Origin: Lytechinus pictus
Taxonomy: Eukaryota
Reading direction: 5' to 3'
Assembly: GCF_037042905.1 (NCBI RefSeq)
Contig: NC_087263.1
Coordinates: 6,572,001 to 6,636,000, forward strand
DNA length: 64,000 nt
Part shown: in pieces, positions 19,826-61,884 of the stretch
How the letters are laid out: each line of letters starts with the position of its first letter
Position numbering within the stretch: position 1 is the first letter of the stretch
The notes under the pieces: generated by a model
What the model saw: the letters and a program-made list of their open reading frames with translations, nothing else
Told to the model about the DNA's origin: nothing
Database searches by the model: none
Translations under genes and position numbers: made by a program

Positions 19826-21074
19826 ATCTGTTGTTTCTATTTGGATTGTTTAATGGTTTAATTGTATATTTTTATTTCGATGAATTGATACTCTTGATTC
19901 CTTGGTGGACTATGAATTTACGATTTACGATATACATTCGTTGGTGAGAGTGTGTATGAGTGTGTGTTTCCATTATACGAACAACCGTCTTTTCTTTTAT
20001 TATCGTTGAGTGTCACGAAAAATGGATCTTAAAAAGAAATAAAGCATTCCTTCAATATGATATTAATCAAAATCTCAGACATGTCAACATGGTCAATATC
20101 TGACATGTAACTGACACTCTCCATATTAATTATAAAAATAACTTCTCATAGTCCCTTTCAGACCCAGGAAGAACGAATGGTAATTATACTGAATGTACAA
20201 ACAAAGCACACTTTCGGTTTATACTCCTTGGTTGACAGATAAAATGAAAGGATGAAAAACATTACCATTTGACACCCCAATCAGTTCCTGCTCAGAGATA
20301 TTAATTTCATATTTGGTATTACTTGCAGAAAGAAGTAGCATTTATAGAAGTGGAAGTATAGTAGTATAGTAGCACAAAAAGCGCTTCGTGTGAACAGGGT
20401 AATAGAGCTAGGCATAGCTGCGATGCATAGTTACCAGTAAGGACATGGGTAAACATAAACGTTTCAGAAGCAAAAATAATAATCTAAAGGCAAGTTTTGA
20501 ACGTTTGTCAAACAATAAAGATGCCATTAACTGACATGACGGTCATATGAGTAGGTGGGACATCACCTGAATTACCTGTCATCCTTGTTAGTTTTGATGA
20601 TGTACTGCTAGTAGTAGGTGATGTTATCAGTCAGGGGCGGATGCGCGATTTAGGATAGCAAGAGGGGCTCATTAAGAAGTCAACGTAAAATATAAAAGGT
20701 CATCACTCAATTTTTTTTGGAATACCCCTCCCCCCAAAAAAAACACATAATAATAATAATAATGATAAATAAATAAATGAATAATAAAAACAAAAAAAAA
20801 TCATAAGATAAAACAAATAACTTTAATAAGCAGATAAATACATTTAAAAAAAGTAAAAATACAAAAAATAGAAGCATGTGTGTGTGTGGGTGTGTGTGTG
20901 TGTGAGAGAGATGTGTGTGTGTTCTTTCATTCACACTTCCGGAAATAGCGCGTACGATGGAGCATTATATTTTTTGCACTCAGATATGGCCAATCAAACC
21001 GCTTTTTGTAGTAGCAGAAGAAGAATTGATAGTAGTAGACGTATTAGCAGTAGAATTAGTAGAAGAAGTAGATC

Positions 21075-21076
21075 GA

Positions 21077-21108
<32 letters not shown>

Positions 21109-21190
21109 TAGTAGTAGTAGCAGCAGAAGTAGTAGTAGTAGTAATAGTATATAGTAGTAGCAGAATTAGTAATAGGAGTAGTAGCAGTAG
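21075..21190. repeat. Compound (AGC)n/(AGT)n microsatellite
   Basis: Directly visible. Confidence 0.9.
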
Positions 21191-22143
21191 TATAAGTAGG
21201 CATGGTAAGTGTAGAAAAAAGGCCATCGGAGGCTCCTCGAACCGGATCGCTGATTCAAACTTGTTTCATTACACACAGGAATGATACCAGTGCTTGCCAA
21301 TATTGTGTTATGGTAGAAATGCGATTATCAGAAATTATTATCATAGAAGGTATACCTTTTTTATTGCAACTCAAAACATAATTTGCGCTATAGCGGCGAA
21401 GGGGATACCAGTACCGTTTCCTTTCTTTTGTTTTAAGAGAGAGAAAGCAGAAATGAGGCATGATGATGGCGAATGACACAGAAATAGTATTATAATGAGA
21501 GAAATGAGTTCATGAAGTATACAGTATTATTAAGTACCCCTTCAGTACCCATATCAACTCGTAGATGATCTAAATGGGATCAGCTCAATGTGCTTTAATT
21601 TTACACCCCCCCCCCCCCATCAAACGAATTTATGGTTTTTCTCCGGCGATTTCAGGCCACAGTATTTCTCATATCAAAGCAATCGTTGTTTGTACTACTA
21701 TTAGGTTGATTAACATTGATCGTAGAGGCGATAATATTATTTGACATTTAATCACGAATTGAAATATATTCATTAAAAGCCAACTCGTTTATTTCTTCCG
21801 CCCATGTCCAGGCAATTAAAGCGTGTTTAAAGCGTGGTCGGCGGTAATTTCATCGGCGATTTCCCTCAAAGTGAACGTGTTTAGAATAATCATGTAGGAT
21901 TAGAGGATTTACTTACTCAACGTGCTCATTTTTGGTTTATGATGATAAAATAATGAAATCTGATTATTACCATGGCAGTAATTTCATTTACCAAACCGCT
22001 CTGTCAGCGAAGCCTATACCATTATATTTTGTTACCAATCTACGGGCACCAAGCTAGAAAACGACCAGACCATTTGGATAAATGATTGGAATGATTTGTT
22101 CAAATTGACCTCCCGTTAATGAGGCCGGCGATTAACTTTTATC

Positions 22144-22499
22144 CATGGGCGGAAATCCCAGGGGGGGACGTGTCCCCCCTACCCAAAATAGTAGGGACAC
22201 ATGTAGACCGTTCAGACTGTCCTCCGTCACCCGGGGGAAGGGGGAGAGAAGTCTTATCTCTTCAAATGTCCCCCTACAAGTTTCGGTCTTTTGCGATGGA
22301 AAGAATGAAATTGAAATAAAACATATATTTTGGACGAGATTACCTTACTTATTGAGCGATAACCTTTTTTTTTCTTTTCAAATTTATTTCGGCGAAATGA
22401 CCTTACATTTTGGGGGATCACCCTTTTTTGCTTGTCAAATTTTCCAGCCCCCCCCCCCCCTCTAGCCCCCCTACCTTTGGAGACAGATTTCCGCCCTTG
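22144..22499. mobile_element. hAT-type MITE upstream of B1
   Basis: TIRs CATGGGCGGAAATC / GATTTCCGCCCTTG and a perfect 8-bp TSD CTTTTATC. The site is empty in the B2 and B3 units. Confidence 0.85.
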
Positions 22500-22574
22500 C
22501 TTTTATCATTAAGCATTTCCCGCCATCTGCCATATCAAACGTACCTGAAGAACGAATTAAGAAATATAAAAATT

Positions 22575-22602
22575 GCTAATGGTTTTGTTTAATATTTTAC
22601 AG
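22575..22602 (+). promoter_or_regulatory. Putative 5'-UTR splice acceptor with branch point upstream of B1 (conserved at 28703 and 33064)
   Basis: gCTAATggttttgtttaatattttaCAG, identical in all three B units, about 440 nt before the ATG. Confidence 0.55.
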
Positions 22603-23040
22603 ATGCAACAAACTAGTTTCTTTGGAAATCTTGGATATCTATCATGAAAGTCTGCTCTGATTGACAGTGCCGATAATTGAGGACATTTCACGGTTGGTCA
22701 AATGGAACCAAATTGACAGGTTACCTTGTTTCAGAACAAATACGTATATAAGCAACCAGTCTTTATATGAAACTCTCTCGTCGATGTTTGACTATTAAGT
22801 GATACCTGAGCCATTGCCACAATTTGGAGACCAAATTTCTAACCGGACTCGTCAAAAGACAGAAAAAATCAGCGAGTGTACACTGACTTTGATATCGACT
22901 GAAACCCTGCAGATCGGCAGAACATTGAAAGCGTACATGTCCTGGCCTGACAGTGTATAAGCTATTGAGCTGTAAAGGGATAAAGTAAGACCAATATCGA
23001 TTGTTTAATCTTAAATCCCTGAATTGATAGCTTAATCGAA

Positions 23041-46981: not shown

Positions 46982-48812
46982 TAGGGTGTTTAAAACGTTA
47001 TAATGTGTAAGGTAATATTTCAAATCTTTCACCCTGTCTTGGATCCTCTTCTCCCTAAAAACATAGAAACAGTTATAAGCTAGCATGATAATAATATTAA
47101 TACTAACAATGAAAATGATGATAATAATAATGTTAATAATGACTTTAATATTCATGATAATAAACAAAAAAATAATAATGATAATAATAACAATGATAAT
47201 AGTTCTTATTTACCAAGGGTAGCCCCTTTAGGTGTATATAAATCTTTTACTAGAGGGTGATACAAAACACAATGTTAGTGCAATTTGATTGTAATTATTA
47301 ATGTACACTTAGGTCGATCTTTAGATTGTTTTAATTATTGACATTATTATTATTTTTTATTTGGTTTTATTTTGTTTATGGAATACACAAGACAACTGTT
47401 TTATGAGCTAGCGCTATATCTTTCGAAAGTGCGTGCGGTCTTTAAATCCAAACAATAATACATTCTTCATACTAACTCGAAAAAGCGTAAAAATAATGTT
47501 GCTTGGATAAAGGTCATTGCTTTATTCTCGACGAAATTAAACAACCGCGGCTTCCCCAGTTATGTATATATATATATTTTCTGAATCACTGTTAGTATCG
47601 GAACCCTTGTGCTTTGAAATATCTACAAGAATTGTCACTAGTGTGGAAAATTCTAAGCGGTTCAACTTCTTCCCCGTCGGAACTACGTTATGTATTACGC
47701 AATAGAAGATTTATTGAATAATTATATTATTGATTGCTTGTGAAACTGCATTTGGCGTTGTTTGCTGGGAAGACATTGCTGCCGTTTGGGGGACGGTCGG
47801 GTCTTTTCTTGCTCATGATTAATATCGATTTTCTTATTGATAGCCTAAGTGAATCTTGAAGATTTGTTTGAAATTTGCATTTCTTCAAGCTATATTAAAA
47901 CAATGAGGTGGCATATGCTCCAAGCTGGTTCATAATACAGTATGTGCTGAATAGTGCTTCAACGTACTCTCATATTGTACATTAGAAACGGAATATACCA
48001 TGGAACCTTCGACATGAAGCCCTCGCCTTGTTCAGGATGCAGTAAAGAGAGTGTGTCAAACGGTGCTATTATACAGGAAAAAAAATTTACCATGCGCAAT
48101 TTCATACAAAGAAATAGTAATAATAATAACAATGACAAACTGTGAATAATAAAACAGTAGGGGGCGAGCCCCGCTTGCGTGAACCCTATTCTGAAAATTG
48201 TTGTCAAAATTAAATGTTTCCGTTGTTTGTTTGTTTTACACATAATCATGACAATTTTACCATTCTTTCTTTACCCCCCCCCCCACCCCCGACCTTAACG
48301 TTGATCTAGAGACGTCAAGAAGACTTCGTACCAGCCTGACATCCAATGGCAACACTTTTAATTACGAACTTGGATTTGGAGACCAATGCATCGAAACTAC
48401 TTCACTCTTCCCATAATTGTGTAGTGCTTGAATCATAAATTAAAATAAGGAATAACTTGAATTTCGACAATTCAAGGGTATTGCAAAATATATATATATA
48501 TAGCTGCTATACTCAAGTTGAAACACTTAAATGCTTTCCGGAAACTCCCCAGTGCATGTGTTTGCATGGTTAGCTAAGTATGATGGTAATTGGTACAGAA
48601 ATAACCGCAAGATTTGCCTTCTATTAAGATAATGAATCGATGTAATTACAATTAATAACAAATTAAATGCCTTTGAATCGTAGACTTTGTTTTGTTGCAT
48701 AATGACTGGTTTCTGAGCGTGGACACGCTAAATATATGCTTAGCAAGGTTGAATCAACCATTTAGATGCCAATTTGAACGATTGTCCAGAGAAGTACGCA
48801 CCTAAACCAACC

Positions 48813-50126
48813 ATGGTTTTTAGTAGTTCAAGTGGCTCGGCAGTAGCGGGAAACGGGAGTGCCATCTCCGAGTCTGTGGACAGTTACTCCTCCGATTACA
48901 ACGACAGCCTTTCTTCGGACCACACTTTCGATTACTCATCAAGCTATTTCTCTTCGTACACCTACGAGTATCCATTCTCTTCAACGTGGCTTGCCATTGT
49001 TCCAATGGTTGTTTCCATCTTCAGTGTCGTGACGTTCATTGGAAACCTTTTTGTCATCCTTGCTTACATCCGGGACAAACGCATACGGGCGAGCGTGGCA
49101 AACATCTTCATCCTTAACCTCGCAATGACTGATATCATAGTAGGAGCTCTGGTCTGGACGATCAACCTATCATGGCTCATAAAGGACCAATGGATACTTG
49201 GCGAGATCTTCTGCAAGCTTTGGTTGGTGTTAGACTACTCGGTTGTCCTCATATCCGTCTGGACAATGGTCCTGATAAGCTGGGACCGCTACTGTCTTCT
49301 GACGATGGGTATGAGGTACCAGACTTTCCAGACCAAGAAAAGAATTGGTGTCATACTTGGCTGCGTTTGGGCAGCTACATTCATCTGGTACTTCATCCTT
49401 GCGTTTGCATGGGATTCTATAGCAGGAGAAAACAAGATAGATTATACTGACAACTGTGAGATGGGGTTTGCGGTTAGTTTCTCGGGGACAATGCTCCAGA
49501 ACGTGATCTCATTCTTCATACCGTTTTCAGTTCTGATATTTTTCAATCTTGCGGTGTATGCTAACATCAAACGTAGATCGAGGGGTGTCGTAGGGCAGAG
49601 TCCTCCCTCAAACAAATCCAACCAAGCAACACAATCTACCGGGGTCAGTCAAGAAGGAATGGGCTCATCGGAAGGTCAAGGAAACAGTCCTCTCAGGGAT
49701 ATGAACGTTGCCGAGTGTTCAGAACCAGGCCCATCAACTTCTAGTTTTCGTACAACTGTCCAACATATCCGGCTCCCAGAAGACAAACCAGTCAGTGGTC
49801 GAATCGCAGTTGTGCCGAATACAGAAGAAAGAAGTTTTGCAAAGCATCGCAGAGCTGCGATCGTCCTGAGCATCCTCGTGGGTTGTTTTTTGATCTGTTG
49901 GTTACCTAGCCAAGTGTCCACTTTCATGTACGCAATCTGTGGAACCGACTGCGTCACCGACTTAACATGGGAAGTCACAAGTTCATTTGTTTGGAGTAAC
50001 TCGACTATAAATCCCTTTATATATGCAGCTACAAATAAGCTCTTTCGTCGTAATTTCGTGCACAGTTTATGCCTTGATCGATGGAGCTGTGACTTGAAAC
50101 GGTGCAAAGTCAAGCGCAAACGTTAA
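48813..50126 (+). CDS. Class A aminergic GPCR, histamine H3/H4-like, diverged copy C (~437 aa)
   Basis: First ATG at 48813 in good Kozak context (aaccATGg). NLAMTD, CKLWLVLDY, SWDRY, CEMGF, SFFIPF, CWLPS, VWSNSTINPFIY. Shares SWDRYCLLT, IKRRSxG and NPFIYAATN with the A and B copies. Confidence 0.93.
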   Translation: MVFSSSSGSAVAGNGSAISESVDSYSSDYNDSLSSDHTFDYSSSYFSSYTYEYPFSSTWLAIVPMVVSIFSVVTFIGNLFVILAYIRDKRIRASVANIFILNLAMTDIIVGALVWTINLSWLIKDQWILGEIFCKLWLVLDYSVVLISVWTMVLISWDRYCLLTMGMRYQTFQTKKRIGVILGCVWAATFIWYFILAFAWDSIAGENKIDYTDNCEMGFAVSFSGTMLQNVISFFIPFSVLIFFNLAVYANIKRRSRGVVGQSPPSNKSNQATQSTGVSQEGMGSSEGQGNSPLRDMNVAECSEPGPSTSSFRTTVQHIRLPEDKPVSGRIAVVPNTEERSFAKHRRAAIVLSILVGCFLICWLPSQVSTFMYAICGTDCVTDLTWEVTSSFVWSNSTINPFIYAATNKLFRRNFVHSLCLDRWSCDLKRCKVKRKR

Positions 50127-52520: not shown

Positions 52521-53238
52521 TAAACGTCGCTCTAAAATGTGCAAGAACACATTTTGTCATGTAAACACCAGCGCAAACTTCACAGTCCGTTTGCAATCTG
52601 ATTTTGCAATAAGCAGTGTGAAGATATAAGTATACATTAGGACCCTATATTTATATTGATAGTGTATATTGCAAAATATACATAGAATTTCGCTCGATGT
52701 GTGCTCGATCGCCGTGATCGCTCCGCTCTAAAATGTTGACCCATATCGCCATGGCTTACCCCATCAGAATGTTTCACGCATTAAGCCTCTGTAGCTGGCA
52801 TAGATGGCATATTGATGGTTTCCATGCTAAATCGGGACTTTCTATTCTCGAAAGGTAAAAAGATGGAACAGTGCGTGGTAGTCTTATTCATCGCGTGCAG
52901 CGACCTGTAAACCAAGCATTTAGAAATATGGTCTGAAAACATAAATTGTGTCCCATTTTGTCTTGTTTGTGCATCGATCCTATGGACCTAGGTCCATGGT
53001 TAACCGTAGCTATTTATCAGGCGAATCAGGAACCAGATAGTGTCATTGATCTCAAGATATTAGCTTAGCGATAGACTTTTTTTATTTTTATGTTTCATTG
53101 GACTTAGCGATAGACTTTGATACAAAGCAGATCATTTCCTAAGATATCCGGGTAAATGTCACTCGTTTTGGGCCTACCCGAATAAAGGCCTATCATACGT
53201 GGATTGTCCTTATAGTTACATGCTTACGCATTTCGATT

Positions 53239-55226
53239 ATGGCGGGAAATGTGGACGTTGAATCTGTAGTCGACCGAATCTTCAGGCTGTTCGATGACCA
53301 CGGCAGTGAAGATTACATAGGGGAGCCGGTTTCGCAGACTGAACACATGATCCAATGTGCTATGCAGGCAGAGAAGGGTGGTTACGGGGAGGAGGTAAGC
53401 GAGTTTTTATATTATATAGTCACTTGTTGTCTGTATGGTTTAGAACAGTACAAAGTCTACATTTTATTTAACAAACAGAATTGCTAATTATTCTGCAGGC
53501 GTAGACCCTATACCGTCAGCAGAATATGAGATATTGATGACGGTTTGACAAGAAAAATGAAAAATATAGCTACTGATATTCAATATTTGATTTCGTGACG
53601 TCATATATGCACCGGTAACACCATCATCTTTTTTGAGAGAGATAGAGAGAGGGGGGAACGGAATTTTATCATGGAGTATCACAATTACACACAAAAGTCC
53701 TGGCTTAAAATAGGTCCATAATCTAATGAAAAACATGAATGTCCAGTGGTATTTGTGTTATTGGTTACAAATTTGAAATTTTAATTATTTGTACATTTAA
53801 TTGCTACATACATGTACCATTAGCCGAGCTCGTGTTTAACTGCATGATCAGAGGTTCGGTGCAAAGTTGTGATGTTTTTCAAATGAAATTATTCGAATTT
53901 GCTATTATTGTTATTTTTGCTGTTTTAGTATAGCTTGATGATTCCATGACCTTGCATTAAATTGCAAATGAAATAGCTCTCAGTCGGTTTATATTGCACC
54001 GTTTTTCCTAGACTTTGCCATAATGTAGTGGTAGCATTGATGGCCGACTTGTTATTCGAATAAAGCTCTTTATACTTATTTGTTTACTAATCCAATTATT
54101 ATCAAACTTTACATTTAAAGGTCATATTAGGTGCGCTGCTACACGACATTGGGCATCTCGTTGGCATGGAGCAAGGCTCATCTCGCATGGAAACAGGCGG
54201 GGTTGCTTTGGGAGCAGCGAATCATGAGATCTTGGGATAGAGGTTCCTGCTCGACCTCGGTCTTCCGGAAACAGTTTGCAAGCTGGTCAGAGGTCACGTG
54301 GACGCCAAAAGATACTTGGTTTACAAAAACGAAAAATATAGAAAACGTACGAATTTGATAGAATTGTCTATTGACTTTAGCAAAATTATTGTGGTAAAAC
54401 TATGAATGTCACGTTTTTAACATCCCAGTTTGTTTTTTTATATTTGTATGTTTTATTAAACTTTTTTTTATTATGAAGCCTTCAACAAAATAAAATTAAT
54501 TGAAGGTTGAATGGAAGAGAAATAAAGCAGAATAAAAATGCGGAAAGGAATGAAACCATAAGCGCATATGCTGCTAAGACCCCTTCGGATTCTCTTATAG
54601 TAAACGTCATGGAAACGTCCTGTTGTGTATTCTATATAAAGTAGGGCCATCTATACTTTCTGATGTAACAAGTAAATTTGAAATATTACTTCATACGAAG
54701 TACAATCTGCGTTTAATTGAATGTTTCTTCCTTGCCAAAAAATTATAATGTGGAAAACAAATATAGAAAGTCAAAAGGGGCCTAAGCTTTCGATCCTAGC
54801 AGAATCTTCGTCGGAGGCAAAATGACAAATATAGTGAAGGCCTGAACGTCCATGACGCCGTATATTTAAAAAACAAATAGGTGGGTCTTACCATTCCTGT
54901 AAATGTTACGACATTTTAAACCTTATGTAAAATCGGAAGGCTGTCATTGTGTGCATCAAAATATTCATCTTCAAACTTTGCCATTGTACCTGGGTTTTTT
55001 TTTCACTCTAGAACTGTCTGAAGCAAGTAAGATGACGCTTGTACACCAAGGCGGCCCCATGGATGCTGATGAAGCGGCATCCTTTGAGGCGTCCCCACAC
55101 CATGACCTCATCCTTCAAATGAGACAATGGGATGAAAGGGCAAAGGTCAAGGGGTTACCGATTGACCCACTCCAGAAGTACAAGGAAATGTGCAGGAGAG
55201 TTGTTGGAAACTGTGGCAAAGTGTGA
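53239..55226 (+). pseudogene. phnZ: PhnZ-like HD-domain di-iron phosphonate dioxygenase, 3 exons (53239-53394, 54121-54346, 55012-55226; 198 codons), interrupted by in-frame TAG at 54238-54240 (null allele, young pseudogene or base-call error)
   Basis: Manual splicing with GT-AG introns (phase 0, then phase 1) gives YIGEPVSQTEH...LLHDIGH...NHEILG*RFL...GHVDAKRY...LSEASKMTL.QGGPM...RQWDERAK. This is the PhnZ/TmpB motif order at the expected length. Confidence 0.85.
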
Positions 55227-56589
55227 ATGATTTAATGGATTTGACGAATTTTCATTAATTCAACAGCAATTGATTGCTGTGAAGATCAACCATGCCGTTT
55301 GGATTTATCTTACGTGACGATTTCTTGCCTTTAAACGAAGTTGGGATTGTTTGACGTCATCAATTACCATTTTTGCATTATAGTCCTATCAATCCCAAAT
55401 GATGTGTTTTTCACTGGTTTTTGCAAACAAAAAAGTGTGACATAAATATTTCATAAATTTATTGTAGGCCTATTATTATCCGATGTCGATGAAATGATCA
55501 TGGCAATGCTCGTATTTCTTTTTGCCTTTGCATTCAAATATATATATATATATAATTTTACATTTCGCTTCAGCGTCTCTTCAATCCCCTCTCTCACTGG
55601 AAATTATGGTTTATGGCCATCCTTTCCCCGGACAAGTTCCCGCCTTACACACACACATGCAACCTCTCTCTCTCTCTCTCTGTCTCTCACTTTCTTACTA
55701 TATGTTTGTCCCACCCCCTTCTCTCTTTTTCTTATTATTTTCAAACCTATGCCTTCTCTCGAAGACTAATTTTATGTATTATGCATTTTGTCTTACACTT
55801 TATTAAGGTGGTTGCGATAATGATAATCATGATAATGATGGCGGTGATAGCGGTAACATCATTGTTATCACCATCATATATATATTGATATTACAATTAA
55901 AATAAAATGATAACAAAATATAACTTCAACATAAGGGCAGTGTCATTTTACTCATAATAATTGATGATTATTCATTAATCAATGACTGAACAAGTTCTTG
56001 TGAAAAAATACATTAACATAGGAAAATAAAGCTATTCGGCGCCGAATTAGACCATGTACAAAGAATGAAAGAAACAAATATTGAATGGGACAGCTATTCA
56101 AGATATCTCCATCGTATTGTATTGAGTAAAAGTAATAAGGCCACGGTCAAGTACTTGCCATTTAGGCATTCATGGATTTTTTTTTCTTCAAAATTATCAT
56201 TATTACCACTATTATTATTTACCGGCAGGCACATCCGTTTACTTTCATAATCTCAATCCTCAAATATATTAGTCTCCTATTTTATATATTTTCATTCATT
56301 ATTTCTATAGAGGGAGTAACCGAAGCAAAGAAAATATAGGAAAGACTGTGTGGCGGCACCAAGCTGAAGTTTAAAATGCGGAGTAAACGGAAATAAATGA
56401 GGTGGACGCGGGGAAAAACAAAAACTAAATCATAATTCAAGGGACATAACATGAATGCAATCATGGGTGTTTGTATTTTGGAAGGCGGTGGGCGGGCTTG
56501 CAACTGGTAGGGAGCAATGTTCTAACTGGAGAATCATCTTTTTTTTTATATGGTCCCTTCTATCTTGGTACCGCCATCGTCTTAGTGAA

Positions 56590-59500
56590 TTAAATGATAT
56601 TGCTGAGAGCGCATGCCGTGCAGATGACACTTGCTGCGGCAGAAGCTAGGCCATCACAGAACAAGGCAGAGAGAGTCATGTCAAAAGCATCGAAGATTTG
56701 ACGACAGGTCTCAAGTGCCTGGTTAGGGGAGCATGACGTTTCGCATGCCTCTATAACGGCGATTGGTGCAACTGTTGTGCTGCTGGTTGAAACAACGGGG
56801 GTGGTTGTAATGGGTTGAGTTCGAACTGCTGTGGTCACTACTTCGGTTGGAGTATTAGTGGTTGCCTCAGTAGGGGCATTGGTAGTTGCTTGGGTGGGAG
56901 CATTGGTTGTTGCTTGAGTAGGAGCATTGGTTGTTGCTTGAGTGGGAGCATTGGTTGTTGCTTGAGTGGGAGCATTGGTTGTTGCTTGAGTGGGAGCATT
57001 GGTTGTTGCTTGAGTGAGGGCGTTTGTTGAGGCTTGAGTAGGAGCATTGGTTGTTGCTTGAGCAGGAGCATTGGTTGTTGCTTGAGTGGGAGCATTGGTT
57101 GTTGCTTGAGTAGGAGCATTGGTTGTTGCTTGAGTGGGGGCGTTTGTTGAGGCTTGAGTAGGAGCATTGGTTGTTGCTTGAGTAGGAGCACTTGTTGAGA
57201 CTTGAGTAGCAGCATTGGTTGTTGCTTGAGTTGGAGAATTAGTTGTTGCCTGAGTGGGAGCATTGGTTGTTCCTTGAGTTGGAGCATTGGTTGTTGCTTG
57301 AGTAGCAGCATTGCTTGTTGCTTGAGTAGGAGCATTTGTTGTTGCTTGAGTAGGAGCATTGGTTGTTGCTTGAGTAGGAGCATTGGTTGTTGCTTGAGTG
57401 GGAGTATTGGTTGTTGCTTGAGTGGGAGCATTGGTTGTTGCTTGAGTAGGAGCATTTGTTGTTGCTTGAGTGGGAGCATTTGTTGTTGCTTGAGTGGGTG
57501 CATTGGTTGATGATTGAGTAGGAGCATTGGTTGTTGCTTGAGTGAGGGCGTTTGTTGAGGATTGAGTAGGAGCATTGGTTGTTGCTTGAGTAGGAGCATT
57601 TGTTGAGACTTGAGTAGCAGCATTGGTTGTTGCTTGAGTAGCAGCATTGGTTGTTGGTTGAGTAGGAGCATTGGTAGTTGCCTGTGTTGGAGCATTAGTG
57701 GTTGCCTGAGTAGGAGCATTTGTTGTTGATTGAGTGGGTGCATTGGTTGATGCTTGAGTAGGAGCATTGGTAGTTGCCTGTGTAGGAGCATTAGTTGTTG
57801 CTTGAGTAGGAGCATTTGTTGTTGCTTGAGTAGGAGCATTGGTTGTTTCTTGAGTGGGAGCATTGGTTGTTGCTTGAGTAGGAGCATTGGTAGTTGCCTG
57901 TGTAGGGGCATTGGTTGTTGCTTGAGTAGGAGCATTTGTTGTTGCTTGAGTGGGAGCATTGGTTGTTGCTCGAGTAGGAGCATTTGTTGAGACTTGAGTA
58001 GCAGCGTTGGTTGTTGCTTGAGTAGCAGCATTGGTTGTTTGTTGGGTAGGAGCATTGGTTGTTGCTTGAGTGGGAGCATTGGTTGATGCTTGAGTAGGAG
58101 CATTGGTTGTTGCTTGAGTAGGAGCATTGGTTGTTGCTTGGATGGGAGCATTGGTATTTGCTTGAGTAGGAGCACTTGTTGTTGCTTGAGTAGCAGCATT
58201 TGTTGTTGCTTGAGTAGGAGCATTAGTTGTTGCTTGAGTGGGGGCGTTTGTTGAGGCTTGAGTGGGAGCATTGGTTGTTGCTTGAGTAGGAGCATTAGTT
58301 GATGCTTGGGTAGGAGCATTGGTAGTTGCCTGTGTAGGGGCATTGGTTGTTGCTTGGGTGAGAACGGATGTTGTTGTCTCTTGAGGGGCCTTTGTTGATG
58401 ATTTCGTCTCAGTAGTCTCGACAATGGTCGTTAATTCCACAGGAACAGTCGTCGTTACGACAGCTGCATTTGTTACAATGTCAGTCAGAGGTGTAATGGA
58501 AATGACATTTGAAGTTGTTGCTTGAGTTGGAGCAATTGTTGTTGCTTGAGTAGGAGCATTGGTTGTTGCTTGAGTAGGAGCATTGGTTGTTACTTGAGTT
58601 GGAGAATTAGTTGTTGCCTGAGTGGGAGCATTGGTTGTTCCTTGAGTTGGAGCATTGGTTGTTGCTTGAGTAGCAGCATTGCTTGTTGCTTGAGTAGGAG
58701 CATTTGTTGTTGCTTGAGTAGGAGCATTGGTTGTTGCTTGAGTGGGAGCATTGGTTATTGCTTGAGTAGGAGCATTTGTTGAGGTTTGAGTAGGAACATT
58801 GGTTGATGCTTGAGTAGGAGCATTTGTTGTTGCTTGAGTAGGAGCATTGGTTGTTGCTTGAGTAGGAGTATTGGTTGTTGCTTGAGTGGGAGCATTGGTT
58901 ATTGCTTGAGTAGGAGCATTTGTTGAGGTTTGAGTAGGAACATTGGTTGATGCTTGAGTAGCAGCATTGCTTGTTGCTTGAGTAGGAGCATTTGTTGTTG
59001 CTTGAGTAGGAGCGTTTGTTGAGACCTGAGTAGCAGCATTGGTTGTTGCTTGAGTAGCAGCATTGGTTGTTGGTTGGGTAGGAGCGTTTGTTGAGGCTTG
59101 AGTGGGAGCATTGGTTGTTGCTTGAGTAGGAGCGTTTGATGAGGCTTGAGTAGCAGCATTGGTTGTTGCTTGAGTAGGAACACTGGTTGTTGCTTGGGTG
59201 GGAGCATTGGTTGTTGCTTGAGTTGGAGAATTGGTTGTTGCCTGAGTGGGAGCATTGGTTGTTCCTTGAGTTGGAGCATTGGTTGTTGCTTGAGTAGCAG
59301 CATTGCTTGTTGCTTGAGTAGGAGCATTGCTTGTTGCTTGAGTAGCAGCATTTGTTGTTGCTTGAGTAGGAGCATTGGTTGTTGCTTGAGTGGGGGCGTT
59401 TGTTGAGGCTTGTGTGAGAACAGATGTTGTTGTCTCTTGAGGGGCCTTTGTTGATAATTTCGTCTCAGTAGTCTCGGCAATGGTCGTTAATTCCACAGGA

Positions 59501-60863
59501 GCAGTCGTCGTTATAACAGCTGCATTTGTTACAATGTCAGTCAGAGGTGTAATGGAAATGACATTTGAAGTTGTTGCTTGAGTTGGAGCAATGGTAGTTG
59601 CTTGAGTAGGAGCATTGGTTGATGCTTGAGTGGGAGCATTGGTTGATGCTTGAGTAGCAGCATTAGTTGTTGCTTGAGTAGGAGCATTGGTTGATGCTTG
59701 AGTAGGAGCATTTGTTGTTGCTTGAGTAGGAGCATTGGTTGTTGCTTGAGTAGCAGCATTGGTTGTTGCTTGAGTTGGAGAATTAGTTGTTGCCTGAGTG
59801 GGAGCATTGGTTGTTCCTTGAGTTGGAGCATTGGTTGTTGCTTGAGTAGCAGCATTGCTCGTTGCTTGAGTAGGAGCATTGGTTGTTGCTTGAGTGGGAG
59901 CATTGGTTGATGCTTGAGTAGGAGCATTGGTTGTTGCTTGAGTAGGAGCATTGGTTGTTGCTTGAGTGGGAGCATTGGTTGTTACTTGAGTGGGAGCATT
60001 TGTTGTTGCCTGAGTAGGAGCATTGGTTATTGCTTGAGTAGCAGCATTGGTTGTTGCTTGAGTGGGAGCATTGGTTGATGCTTGAGTAGGAGCATTGGTT
60101 GTTGCTTGAGTGGGAGCATTGGTTGATGCTTGAGTAGCAGCATTAGTTGTTGCTTGAGTGGGAGCATTGGTTGATGCTTGAGTGGGAGCATTTGTTGTTG
60201 CTTGAGTAGGAGCATTGGTTGTTGCTTGAGTTGGAGCATTGGTTGTTGCTTGAGTAGCAGCATTGCTTGTTGCTTGAGTAGGAGCATTGGTTGTTGCTTG
60301 AGTAGGAGCATTGGTTGATGCTTGAGTAGGAGCATTGGTTGTTGCTTGAGTAGGAGCATTGGTTGTTGCTTGAGTGGGAGCATTGGTTGTTGCTTGAGTA
60401 GGAGCATTGGTTGTTGCTTGAGTAGGAGCATTGGTTGCTACTTGAGTGGGAGCATTTGTTGTTGGTTGAGTAGGAGCATTGGTTGTTGCTTGAGTAGGAG
60501 TAGCAGTTGCTACCTGAGTTGTTGCTGGCGTTGCATCACTGGTTAATGATTTTGTCGTAGACTCGGATGTGGATTCGGTTGGGTTCGCACTTGTTGCTTC
60601 TGGTGACGGGCTTGATGTCCCCTCAGTTGGAAGAATTGTTGTTGTTCCAGCCTGCGTTGGCAGTTCTGTAGGACTTTCAGTCGGTAGTTGTGTAACCAAA
60701 CTACCAGCTGTCGGTGTGTTAGTTGTAGCCCCTTGAGTAGTTTGAGACTGGACATCCGTCGACAGCTTGGTTGTTGCCTCATTTGGAATCGTTGTAGTTG
60801 CTGCGAATGTGGTCGTTGAACACATATCAATGCAGGTCTGAACACATGCTGATGGAGTTGTAA
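56590..60863 (-). CDS. Mucin-like Thr/Ala/Pro/Gln/Asn-rich protein, large terminal exon with Cys-containing flanks
   Basis: 4.3 kb open frame. Acceptor ttggttttgttttcAG ends at 60864. CxxxCxxxC lies before the repeats and a 6-Cys segment before the stop. Confidence 0.85.
56845..60515 (-). repeat. 24-bp coding tandem repeat (TQATTNAP)n, roughly 140 units, with two duplicated non-repeat islands
   Basis: Plus-strand unit approximately AGGAGCATTGGTTGTTGCTTGAGT; the unit count is estimated from length. Confidence 0.95.
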
Positions 60864-61884
60864 CTGAAAACAAAACCAATAATAAAACAGACAATATACT
60901 TATTTATAATTTATCACCAATAATCATATTTTTATATATAGATAGTTGCATCATACGGCAACGTAAAGAAAGGTTCGCCTAACTAGGCGTAATGCTTTGA
61001 TTATTTCAAACGAAAGAATTAACATCATATTTAAATAATTCAGTTATAAGAGAACATCATTCGTTGTTGTTAACTAGACTTCTTAAAATTTTCTAAATAA
61101 ATTAAAGAATCTAAGCTGCAACCAAAAATGGCTTGCAAATTTATGTATAACCCGATATTTTCGCTTGCATGAATATTTAATTTTATAATATTGTTATCAA
61201 CATAGACTCCAAGCTGAAAATAATCTGATTCGATCAGGCAGGGTAAAAATCAGGCAAAGGAACACTAAAACTTCATCAAAATCAGACATGAAACAACAGT
61301 AATGTCATAAAAATTGTAAAGAATGAGTTACATTATTTCTGTGAAACAATAATAAGCAATTTGATGGTGTCTTACCTCCCACATATACTTCTGAATACAA
61401 TCATTTTCATTTCAAATTTTGTCCATCAAGAATAAATAAAAATGAATTGAAAACTGCTTTTATGAATAAGATGTTCGTTTCTGTTACTTATTCCGTTACA
61501 AGAGAGACATTTCGTACACACGTATGAAAATATCAAATAATTATGATTTTTTTTTATATATATAAATAACGAAAGGAAGTGGGGACATGACATCATCCTC
61601 CAACTTAATGAATAATCATTACTGCGTGCAAATAACTGTTTAAAAATATTGTTAAACTATGAAATTCAATAACTTCGTAATTTGTTATCGGATTTTGATG
61701 AAATCATCAGCGTTTTACTCAATGGATTGCATTCCATTTATGTAGATTTAATCATTTTCAGCCTGAAACGTCTTAAAGATTAAAAGGAAAGCAGTAGGTC
61801 CCCGGCTTGCAGAGTACTATGTAAATCATGTCCACCCAATTGAAGTGGCAATATAACTACAAAGCATACAGACAGAAAACTATA

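What the first reader, a model, noticed from the sequence alone, without database searches (positions are those of the whole stretch)
53239..55226. Intron-containing animal homolog of the bacterial C-P bond-cleaving enzyme PhnZ
Seen: three exons splice to a 198-codon HD protein with Y-x-x-E, H, HD-x-x-H, HE, H-x-x-x-K-R-Y and R-x-x-D in the PhnZ arrangement. Canonical introns and host repeats argue against contamination. Known: PhnZ works with PhnY* to cleave (R)-2-amino-1-hydroxyethylphosphonate to glycine and phosphate; TmpB is a related enzyme; many marine invertebrates contain aminoethylphosphonate. Inference: this animal lineage has, or recently had, its own oxidative phosphonate catabolism, by ancient inheritance or old horizontal transfer. 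No PhnY-like partner is in this window.
Basis: partly seen in the sequence, partly recalled or inferred. Interest (0 to 1): 0.75.

Follow-up and report, generated by a model that had tools for sequence, protein, structure and literature searches.

The report
Sea-urchin PhnZ-like gene, stop allele
This is a real, spliced sea-urchin gene for a PhnZ-type iron enzyme that probably cuts carbon-phosphorus bonds; public databases already name it in this species, and the copy in this assembly is cut short by one premature stop codon.

Summary
Three exons (53239-53394, 54121-54346, 55012-55226) with GT..AG introns give 198 codons. RNA contigs confirm both splice junctions. All four coding pieces match the PhnZ family model TIGR03276 in order.

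It is a host gene. It lies at 6.6 Mb on a chromosome-scale contig, has a dispersed host repeat in intron 2, and keeps the same neighbours in Lytechinus variegatus.

It is not new. The read-through product is 98.5% identical to RefSeq XP_054774415.1, [quoted passage not shown] of Lytechinus pictus. Similarly named orthologues occur in echinoderms, hemichordates, amphioxus, cnidarians, a crustacean and a bryozoan; mollusc, brachiopod and annelid orthologues carry generic names. These form one well-supported clade that shares an intron position between urchin and sea anemone.

The TAG at 54238-54240 replaces Glu92. That codon is GAG in L. variegatus, GAA in a more distant relative and Glu in the RefSeq protein. 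dN/dS against L. variegatus is 0.10, so this is a recent null allele, not an old pseudogene. An RNA contig also carries it.

No PhnY*/TmpA-specific partner and no PEP mutase were found. The genome does hold intron-split PhnW and PhnX homologues, which supports host phosphonate catabolism. Enzyme activity is untested.

The parts
53100..53238 (+). 5' untranslated region (minimum extent)
   Evidence: RNA contigs of runs X1 and X2 begin at or before 53100 and 53111 and run into exon 1.
53239..53394 (+). Exon 1, codons 1-52. Holds the YxxE loop (Y26, E29; 53314-53325) and the first iron ligand H36 (53344-53346).
   Evidence: Translation. TIGR03276 positions 2-44, E 4e-13. Aligns to PhnZ Y24, E27 and H34.
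53395..54120 (+). Intron 1 (726 nt, GT..AG, phase 0)
   Evidence: Spliced out in RNA contigs of two runs. Ptychodera flava has an intron at the same position.
54121..54346 (+). Exon 2, codons 53-128 (first base of codon 128). Holds H60-D61 (54142-54147), H64, H87 (54223-54225), H111 (54295-54297) and K115.
   Evidence: Translation. TIGR03276 positions 46-70 and 82-113. Aligns to PhnZ H58, D59, H62, H80, H104 and K108.
54238..54240 (+). Premature stop TAG at codon 92 (Glu92 to stop)
   Evidence: The codon is GAG in L. variegatus and GAA in a more distant relative. RefSeq XP_054774415.1 has Glu here. The TAG is present in an RNA contig with 0 differences. It lies 106 nt upstream of the last exon junction.
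54347..55011 (+). Intron 2 (665 nt, GT..AG, phase 1), partly retained in RNA
   Evidence: The junction 54346|55012 is seen in run X2. Other contigs run through the donor site. Ptychodera and the sea anemone Exaiptasia have an intron at the same position.
54754..54833 (.). Dispersed host repeat inside intron 2
   Evidence: 95-99% identical copies lie on many chromosomes; 636 first-look candidates. Summed RNA contig depth is about 10^4. No Rfam match.
55012..55226 (+). Exon 3, codons 128-198 plus TGA. Holds S133, T136, Q140, R165 and the last iron ligand D168 (55131-55133).
   Evidence: TIGR03276 positions 116-179, E 4.6e-18. Aligns to PhnZ 122-182, including S126, T129, Q133, R158 and D161.
55227..55400 (+). 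3' untranslated region (minimum extent)
   Evidence: RNA contigs continue to at least 55400.

Best explanation
This locus is the single-copy sea-urchin orthologue of a PhnZ-like HD-domain diiron oxygenase gene found across animals. The species is Lytechinus, most likely L. pictus.

The intact protein has 198 residues. It carries the full H...HD...H...H...D ligand set for a mixed-valent Fe(II)/Fe(III) centre and the YxxE gating loop. It also carries the residues that, from my own knowledge of the PhnZ structures, bind the phosphonate in PhnZ.

By analogy with PhnZ and TmpB it should bind a 1-hydroxy-2-amino(alkyl)phosphonate, activate O2 at the second iron, and cleave the C-P bond to give phosphate plus glycine or a related acid. 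This step is inferred, not shown.

The allele in this assembly has a G-to-T change that turns Glu92 (GAG) into TAG. Translation would stop after 91 residues, before ligands H111 and D168, so this copy cannot make an active enzyme. It is a recent null allele, apparently segregating or specific to one line, in a gene that is otherwise under strong purifying selection.

The urchin appears to lack phosphonate synthesis but has PhnW and PhnX homologues. The likely role is therefore salvage of phosphorus, and of glycine, from dietary phosphonates.
For: Gene model and splicing:
- The model follows from the sequence, and RNA contigs confirm both junctions.

Family:
- The pieces match TIGR03276 in order.
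- The intact allele P0274 scores 200.3 bits over model positions 2-178 of 179.
- P0274 scores 125 bits to the PhnZ structure 4MLM and 118 bits to the TmpB structure 6NPA.

Catalytic residues:
- All are present, and all are invariant or nearly so in 26 animal sequences.
- Their roles follow PMC8177086.

Identity and copy number:
- The read-through product is 98.5% identical over 198 residues to XP_054774415.1 of L. pictus, which has Glu at codon 92.
- Only one locus in the 812 Mb genome matches the family.

Host origin:
- The order GPCR, HD gene, large minus-strand gene is the same in L. variegatus.

Age of the stop:
- Codon 92 is GAG in L. variegatus and GAA in a more distant relative.
- dN/dS is 0.10 (dS 0.109) against L. 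variegatus and 0.13 against the more distant relative.

Phylogeny:
- The animal clade has UFboot 100 and SH-aLRT 95. Echinoderms, hemichordates, molluscs, cnidarians and crustaceans are each recovered within it.
- Intron positions are shared with Ptychodera and Exaiptasia.

Pathway context:
- The genome holds intron-split PhnX (C19:13835649-13839995) and PhnW (C7:30516790-30523538) homologues. Every exon that was scanned (four of each gene) best-hits those equivalog models.
- No PEP mutase was found.
Against: - No PhnY*- or TmpA-specific hydroxylase was identified, so the source of a 1-hydroxyphosphonate substrate is unknown.
- The animal proteins fall slightly below the curated TIGR03276 cut-off and well below the TmpB and PhnZ1 equivalog cut-offs. 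Substrate identity therefore cannot be read from sequence.
- The nearest bacterial homologues sit beside PhnX-like HAD hydrolases and DUF5690 or FAD-oxidase genes, not beside a 2-oxoglutarate dioxygenase. Their own substrate is unproven.
- The frequency of the TAG allele is unknown. One RNA data set carries it, and contigs can hide a second allele.
- Expression in the 2026 raw-read RNA runs is very low: a few reads in one run and none in the other, with about 6% of each run read.
Confidence: 0.8

Rival explanations
1. The gene is a true pseudogene: the function has been lost in this species and the locus is decaying.
For: There is an in-frame TAG at codon 92 that an RNA contig also carries. 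Expression is low in two RNA runs. The window allele also carries a derived E124K change.
Against: The stop is the only disabling change. Splice sites, the start codon, the stop codon and all catalytic residues are intact. dN/dS is 0.10 against L. variegatus. The RefSeq protein of the same species has Glu92. An RNA sample shares the RefSeq P180S allele in exon 3, which shows several alleles in the population.
Confidence: 0.1
2. The TAG is an assembly or sequencing error and the individual really has GAG.
For: It is a single-base difference from every relative.
Against: An RNA contig from run X2 (depth 16) spans the codon with 0 differences. That sample is not simply the assembly haplotype, because it differs from the window at 9 positions further 3'.
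Confidence: 0.03
3. The stop is bypassed by translational read-through or by A-to-I editing of UAG to UGG, so a full-length enzyme is still made.
For: The mRNA is made and spliced despite the stop.
Against: No edited base is seen at 54239 in the RNA contig. From my own knowledge, the context UAG-AGG-UUC is not a known read-through context. Relatives have Glu here, not Trp.
Confidence: 0.03
4. The animal clade is an HD-domain enzyme with another job, such as a phosphohydrolase or an oxygenase acting on a non-phosphonate substrate. The PhnZ name would then be only an annotation transfer.
For: Scores fall below all three curated equivalog cut-offs. No hydroxylase partner was found. There is no conserved neighbour in the three animal genomes examined. 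No experimental paper on an animal member was found.
Against: The six-ligand diiron motif and the YxxE loop are specific to PhnZ and TmpB among HD proteins (PMC8177086). Both features, and the residues aligned to the PhnZ phosphonate pocket, are conserved in 25-26 of 26 animal sequences. The same genome holds PhnW and PhnX homologues.
Confidence: 0.2
5. The locus is bacterial contamination or a very recent transfer.
For: The family is mainly bacterial, at 45-50% identity.
Against: The gene has two spliceosomal introns confirmed by RNA and a host repeat in intron 2. It lies at 6.6 Mb on contig C19, one of 368 contigs in the 812 Mb assembly (C19 is 15.8 Mb). Synteny with L. variegatus is kept. 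The animal clade follows animal phylogeny.
Confidence: 0.01

Closest known systems
RefSeq XP_054774415.1, '2-amino-1-hydroxyethylphosphonate dioxygenase (glycine-forming)-like' [Lytechinus pictus], and XP_041453331.1 (Lytechinus; encoded on the L. variegatus assembly GCA_018143015.1)
   Same: It is the same gene. The product is 198 residues long and 98.5% (L. pictus) or 97% (L. variegatus) identical. The exon structure is the same and the neighbours are the same in L. variegatus.
   Different: The window allele has TAG where the RefSeq protein has Glu92. It also differs from it at residues 124 (Lys for Glu) and 180 (Pro for Ser).
PhnZ of marine bacterium HF130_AEPn_1 (PDB 4MLM, 4MLN, 4N6W, 4N71)
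   Same: The intact allele aligns over PhnZ residues 9-182 (125 bits). Y24, E27, H34, H58, D59, H62, H80, H104, K108, S126, T129, Q133, R158 and D161 are all conserved.
   Different: The two share well under half of their residues. The urchin protein has a five-residue longer loop between H64 and H87. The urchin gene is not next to a phnY* gene and has introns. Activity is untested.
TmpB of Leisingera caerulea (PDB 6NPA; NCBIfam NF049941)
   Same: It has the same fold family, the same ligand set and the YxxE loop. The PDB score is nearly as good, at 118 bits.
   Different: It scores 154 bits against a cut-off of 300. The TmpA-linked bacterial clade lies far from the animal clade in the tree. 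No exon tested was TmpA-specific.
PhnZ1 hydroxymethylphosphonate dioxygenase of Gimesia maris (NCBIfam NF052439)
   Same: It belongs to the same HD oxygenase family.
   Different: It scores 119 bits against a cut-off of 300.
Bacteroidota TIGR03276 proteins (for example Cyclobacterium salsum)
   Same: These are the closest bacterial sequences, at 48-50% identity, and they neighbour the animal clade in the tree. They score closer to PhnZ than to TmpB (165 against 121 bits).
   Different: They pass the family cut-off (218 bits). They are intronless and sit beside a PhnX-like HAD hydrolase (TIGR03351) and DUF5690.
myo-Inositol oxygenase (MIOX), the one well-studied animal HD diiron oxygenase
   Same: It uses a mixed-valent diiron HD-domain oxygenase mechanism (PMC8177086).
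   Different: MIOX lacks the YxxE loop. No sequence match to MIOX appeared in the family or PDB searches.

Membership tests
[quoted passage not shown] | Six-residue diiron ligand motif H...HD...H...H...D | tested here: met
   H36, H60, D61, H87, H111 and D168 align to PhnZ H34, H58, D59, H80, H104 and D161. The five that were tallied are present in 25-26 of 26 animal sequences; H87 was not tallied. The motif definition is from PMC8177086. In the window allele the TAG comes before H111 and D168.
[quoted passage not shown] | YxxE substrate-gating loop (Y24/E27 in PhnZ, Y30/E33 in TmpB) | tested here: met
   Y26-I-G-E29 is in exon 1. Y is present in 26 of 26 and E in 25 of 26 animal sequences.
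[quoted passage not shown] | Residues lining the phosphonate pocket (PhnZ K108, S126, T129, Q133, R158; roles from my own knowledge of the PhnZ structures) | tested here: met
   K115, S133, T136, Q140 and R165 align to them. They are conserved in 25-26 of 26 animal sequences.
NCBIfam TIGR03276 (phosphonate degradation HD-domain oxygenase, hypothetical equivalog) | Whole-protein score at or above the curated cut-off of 214.6 bits | tested here: not met
   The intact allele P0274 scores 200.3 bits (E 1.8e-59, model positions 2-178 of 179). Other animal proteins score 194-203 bits. Bacterial members score 215-222 bits. This is a near miss at full coverage.
TmpB equivalog NF049941 and PhnZ1 equivalog NF052439 | Score at or above 300 bits | tested here: not met
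   The scores are 153.9 and 118.8 bits.
PhnY*/PhnZ or TmpA/TmpB two-enzyme oxidative pathway | A dedicated Fe(II)/2-oxoglutarate hydroxylase partner (PhnY* of the PhyH family, or TmpA of the BBOX-like TauD family) | tested here: inconclusive
   None is in the window or on C19. The genome has at least 10 BBOX/TMLD-like loci and about 5 PhyH loci. All 10 exons tested score higher as BBOX or TMLD than as TmpA. No PhnY*-specific model or seed was available.
PhnY*/PhnZ or TmpA/TmpB two-enzyme oxidative pathway | O2-dependent cleavage of a 1-hydroxyphosphonate to phosphate plus an acid | not testable with these tools
   This needs an enzyme assay.
Host (metazoan) gene rather than contaminant | Spliceosomal introns removed in RNA, host repeats, conserved synteny, and a gene tree that follows the species tree | tested here: met
   

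The most novel reading that the evidence does not exclude
Marine invertebrates from cnidarians to echinoderms have vertically inherited their own C-P bond-cleaving oxygenase. It would work without a bacterial-type PhnY* partner, for example on 1-hydroxy-aminophosphonates from food, or on products of one of the urchin's many BBOX-like dioxygenases. It would act beside host PhnW and PhnX, so animals themselves, not only their microbes, would mineralise phosphonates. The Glu92-stop allele in Lytechinus pictus, a laboratory genetic model, would then be a natural knockout for testing this.
Probability: 0.45. Interest if true: 0.6.

Novelty: already known. Interest (0 to 1): 0.35.

Why it matters
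Phosphonate breakdown is treated in the literature as a microbial trait (PMC10574752). Apart from a 2026 preprint on PhnW/PhnX in corals, which does not mention PhnZ, I found no paper on animal PhnZ homologues.

Here the gene is conserved across animals. In this urchin it is accompanied by PhnW and PhnX homologues and no PEP mutase. Together these point to host-encoded use of dietary phosphonates.

This is worth a biochemical test, and the natural null allele in a model urchin makes a genetic test possible.

As a scan finding it is ordinary. The gene is already predicted and named in RefSeq for this species, and the new element is a single nonsense allele.

Tried and rejected
- Contamination was rejected on introns, host repeat, synteny and tree.
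- A second, intact paralogue was sought. Only one locus matches TIGR03276 in the genome.
- PEP mutase was not detected with TIGR02320 or PF13714.
- DUF5690, the neighbour of the closest bacterial homologues, was not detected.
- For a TmpA partner, many BBOX-like loci were found but none of 10 exons prefers the TmpA model.
- A PhnY* seed was sought in four bacterial neighbourhoods. They held PhnX-like HAD, FAD-oxidase and transporter genes, or unrelated genes in one case, but no PhyH gene. A PhnY*-specific search of the urchin genome was therefore not done.
- No conserved neighbour was found in animals (L. variegatus, Ptychodera, Exaiptasia).
- The intron-2 repeat has no Rfam match.
- The apparent TAG inside one PhnX exon match is the intron's acceptor AG overrun, not a stop within the exon.
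- AU tests did not reject placing the rotifer Adineta in the animal clade (p 0.28). They also did not reject joining the animals with the Cafeteria group (p 0.17). Transfer versus ancient eukaryotic inheritance is therefore unresolved.
- Three primary PhnZ and TmpB papers (DOI 10.1021/acs.biochem.9b00044, also tried as PMC6503667; PMC3839769; PMC3986159) are not held. Pocket-residue roles therefore rest on my own knowledge plus PMC8177086.
Full report
**1. The observation.**
Reading the window gives a three-exon gene on the + strand.
- Exon 1 is 53239-53394. It starts with ATG and is followed by GTAAGC.
- Exon 2 is 54121-54346. It is preceded by TTAAAG and followed by GTACGA.
- Exon 3 is 55012-55226. 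It is preceded by CTCTAG and ends in TGA.

The spliced CDS is 597 nt, or 198 codons, with a single in-frame TAG at codon 92 (54238-54240).

The four stop-free pieces match NCBIfam TIGR03276 ("phosphonate degradation HD-domain oxygenase") in order, at model positions 2-44, 46-70, 82-113 and 116-179 of 179. The next-best families are always TmpB (NF049941) and PhnZ1 (NF052439). Pfam sees only a weak HD hit in the short pieces.

**2. RNA evidence.**
Contigs of two public runs of the same organism skip 53395-54120 exactly at GT..AG. One run also joins 54346 to 55012.

A 490-nt contig of run X2 (depth 16) covers 53111-53392 joined to 54119-54326 with no difference from the window, so the TAG is in mRNA.

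Other contigs run through the exon 2 donor into intron 2, which indicates partial retention of that intron.

In X2 the 3' end differs from the window at 9 positions. One is 55167 C>T, which gives P180S, the residue found in the RefSeq protein. So several alleles circulate.

Two 2026 raw-read RNA runs, each about 6% sampled, gave only a few reads on exon 1.

**3. It is host DNA.**
- The window is C19:6572001-6636000 of an 812 Mb assembly, and only this locus matches the family.
- A core of about 75-80 nt in intron 2 occurs at 95-99% identity on many chromosomes.
- The neighbours are an intronless 7TM receptor upstream and a large repetitive mucin-like gene on the opposite strand downstream. In Lytechinus variegatus the HD gene likewise sits between an upstream 7TM receptor gene and a large gene on the opposite strand.

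**4. Identity.**
A search of 1.8 billion representatives with exon 3 found mostly exon-sized fragments plus full-length bacterial proteins.

Word-indexed searches with full-length hits then brought up named animal proteins. RefSeq calls them [quoted passage not shown] in these groups:
- hemichordates: Ptychodera, Glandiceps;
- echinoderms: Lytechinus pictus, Diadema, Asterias, Amphiura;
- amphioxus;
- the jellyfish Rhopilema;
- the lobster Panulirus;
- the bryozoan Watersipora.

Unnamed or generically named orthologues occur in corals, Exaiptasia, molluscs, Lingula, krill, an annelid and a rotifer.

The window's read-through product (X at the stop) is 98.5% identical over all 198 residues to XP_054774415.1 of L. 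pictus. It differs only at residue 92 (stop for Glu), 124 (Lys for Glu) and 180 (Pro for Ser). It is 97% identical to the Lytechinus protein XP_041453331.1, which is encoded on the L. variegatus assembly.

The gene is therefore already predicted and named in this species.

**5. The stop codon.**
Codon 92 is GAG in L. variegatus and GAA in a more distant relative. That relative's genomic contigs show the same intron boundaries and an open exon 2. TAG is thus a single G-to-T change.

Nei-Gojobori estimates are as follows:

| Comparison | dS | dN | dN/dS |
|---|---|---|---|
| Window vs L. variegatus | 0.109 | 0.011 | 0.10 |
| Window vs more distant relative (exons 2-3) | 0.67 | 0.088 | 0.13 |

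Nothing else is broken. The stop aligns to PhnZ A85, five residues after ligand H80. The product would have 91 residues and would lack H111, K115, S133, T136, Q140, R165 and D168.

The stop lies 106 nt upstream of the last exon junction. By the usual rule (my own knowledge) this makes the mRNA a candidate for nonsense-mediated decay.

The best reading is a recent null allele, not an old pseudogene and not an assembly error.

**6. Family features.**
PMC8177086 defines the HD oxygenases by the H...HD...H...H...D diiron motif. It defines PhnZ and TmpB in particular by a YxxE loop. The Tyr of that loop caps the second iron until substrate binds, and the Glu contacts the substrate amine.

The urchin protein has Y26/E29, H36, H60/D61, H64, H87, H111 and D168. 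It also has K115, S133, T136, Q140 and R165, aligned to the PhnZ phosphonate pocket. Of these, the 16 that were tallied (H87 was not) are conserved in 25-26 of 26 animal sequences.

Scores of the intact allele:
- against solved structures: 125 bits to PhnZ and 118 bits to TmpB;
- against curated models: 200.3 bits for TIGR03276 (cut-off 214.6), 154 for TmpB (cut-off 300) and 119 for PhnZ1 (cut-off 300).

Family membership in the broad sense is secure. Equivalog membership, and therefore the substrate, is not.

**7. Phylogeny.**
The tree was built with IQ-TREE under LG+C20+F+G4 from 113 sequences and 197 columns.

25 of the 26 named animal rows (24 database proteins plus the window's read-through product), with 17 unnamed and one transcriptome sequence, form a clade with support 100/95. 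Support for the groups inside it is:

| Group | UFboot/SH-aLRT |
|---|---|
| Echinoderms | 99/81 |
| Hemichordates | 99/95 |
| Molluscs | 96/93 |
| Cnidarians | 97/90 |
| Crustaceans | 99/88 |

Intron 2 is at the same position in urchin, Ptychodera and the sea anemone Exaiptasia. Intron 1 is shared with Ptychodera. The gene was therefore present before cnidarians and bilaterians split.

The clade sits in a poorly resolved group of Bacteroidota-rich sequences that score nearer to PhnZ than to TmpB. The TmpA-linked clade is distant.

The rotifer sequence falls outside the animal clade, but forcing it inside is not rejected (p 0.28). Joining the animals with the Cafeteria group is also not rejected (p 0.17). 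Old transfer versus ancient inheritance remains open.

**8. Pathway context.**
Not found:
- PEP mutase;
- DUF5690.

Present but not specific:
- at least 10 BBOX/TMLD-like TauD loci and about 5 PhyH loci;
- all ten TauD-family exons tested prefer the BBOX or TMLD models over TmpA.

The closest bacterial homologues lie next to PhnX-like HAD hydrolases (TIGR03351), DUF5690 and FAD oxidases rather than next to a 2-oxoglutarate dioxygenase.

Following that lead turned up two further host genes:
- a five-exon phosphonoacetaldehyde hydrolase (PhnX, TIGR01422) homologue at C19:13835649-13839995;
- a seven-exon AEP-pyruvate transaminase (PhnW) homologue at C7:30516790-30523538.

Every exon that was scanned on its own (four of each gene) best-hits those equivalog models. 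A TAG inside one PhnX match is only the intron's acceptor site.

A 2026 preprint reports PhnW and PhnX in coral genomes and does not mention PhnZ.

**9. Verdict.**
The inference that the lineage has its own phosphonate catabolism gains support from the PhnW and PhnX homologues. The oxidative branch, however, lacks an identified hydroxylase and any assay.

The gene is already in RefSeq under this name for this species, so novelty is low. The allele-specific stop is the only new item. The unexplored biology of the animal-wide clade is the part worth following.

Noticed in passing
G000:C19:13835649-13839995 (+), outside the window; loci L030-L035, L044-L046: A five-exon homologue of phosphonoacetaldehyde hydrolase (PhnX, TIGR01422) covers model positions 1-251 in order. 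The four exons scanned on their own all best-hit that equivalog model. It lies on the same chromosome as the PhnZ-like gene, 7.2 Mb away.
   Followed up: partly
G000:C7:30516790-30523538 (-), outside the window; loci L036-L043: A seven-exon homologue of 2-aminoethylphosphonate-pyruvate transaminase (PhnW; TIGR02326, NF010006) covers model positions 4-359. The four exons scanned on their own best-hit PhnW models by a wide margin. A separate exon on C14 looks like an ordinary AGXT-type aminotransferase.
   Followed up: partly
G000: C11:18.07-18.13 Mb, C2:70.09-70.22 Mb, C9:17.29-17.31 Mb, C9:2.12-2.31 Mb, C2:46.39 Mb, C7:32.08-32.12 Mb, and single hits on C15, C16 and C18: The gamma-butyrobetaine/trimethyllysine-hydroxylase-like (TauD) family is large and partly tandem, with at least 10 loci. 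TmpA, the partner of TmpB, belongs to this family, so one paralogue could act on phosphonates.
   Followed up: partly
window 54754-54833 (intron 2): A short dispersed repeat has hundreds of 95-99% identical copies on many chromosomes and very high summed depth in RNA contigs. It has no Rfam match.
   Followed up: partly
window 54347-55011: Intron 2 is partly retained. RNA contigs of two runs read through the exon 2 donor, while intron 1 is cleanly removed.
   Followed up: no
L012:5005-6564, L013:1123-3768, L026:787-4570 (bacterial loci): The bacterial TIGR03276 genes examined in three of five neighbourhoods (two of them closest to the animal clade) sit beside a PhnX-like HAD hydrolase (TIGR03351). 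DUF5690 and/or an FAD oxidase is often present too, but no PhnY*-type dioxygenase. Their substrate is probably not settled.
   Followed up: partly
L028:10001-13038 and 20413-23038 (Ptychodera flava): The acorn worm has two tandem copies of the PhnZ-like gene, 67% identical to each other.
   Followed up: no
window 48774-50126 (+) and 56590-60894 (-): The flanking genes are an intronless aminergic-type 7TM receptor and a 1434-residue Thr/Ala/Pro-rich octapeptide-repeat mucin-like ORF. In L. variegatus (L025) the gene is likewise flanked by an upstream 7TM receptor gene and a large gene on the opposite strand.
   Followed up: partly
P0353 (Adineta ricciae) in the tree: The bdelloid rotifer homologue groups with Cytophagales bacteria rather than with other animals. 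This could be a separate transfer, but the AU test does not reject animal monophyly (p 0.28).
   Followed up: partly
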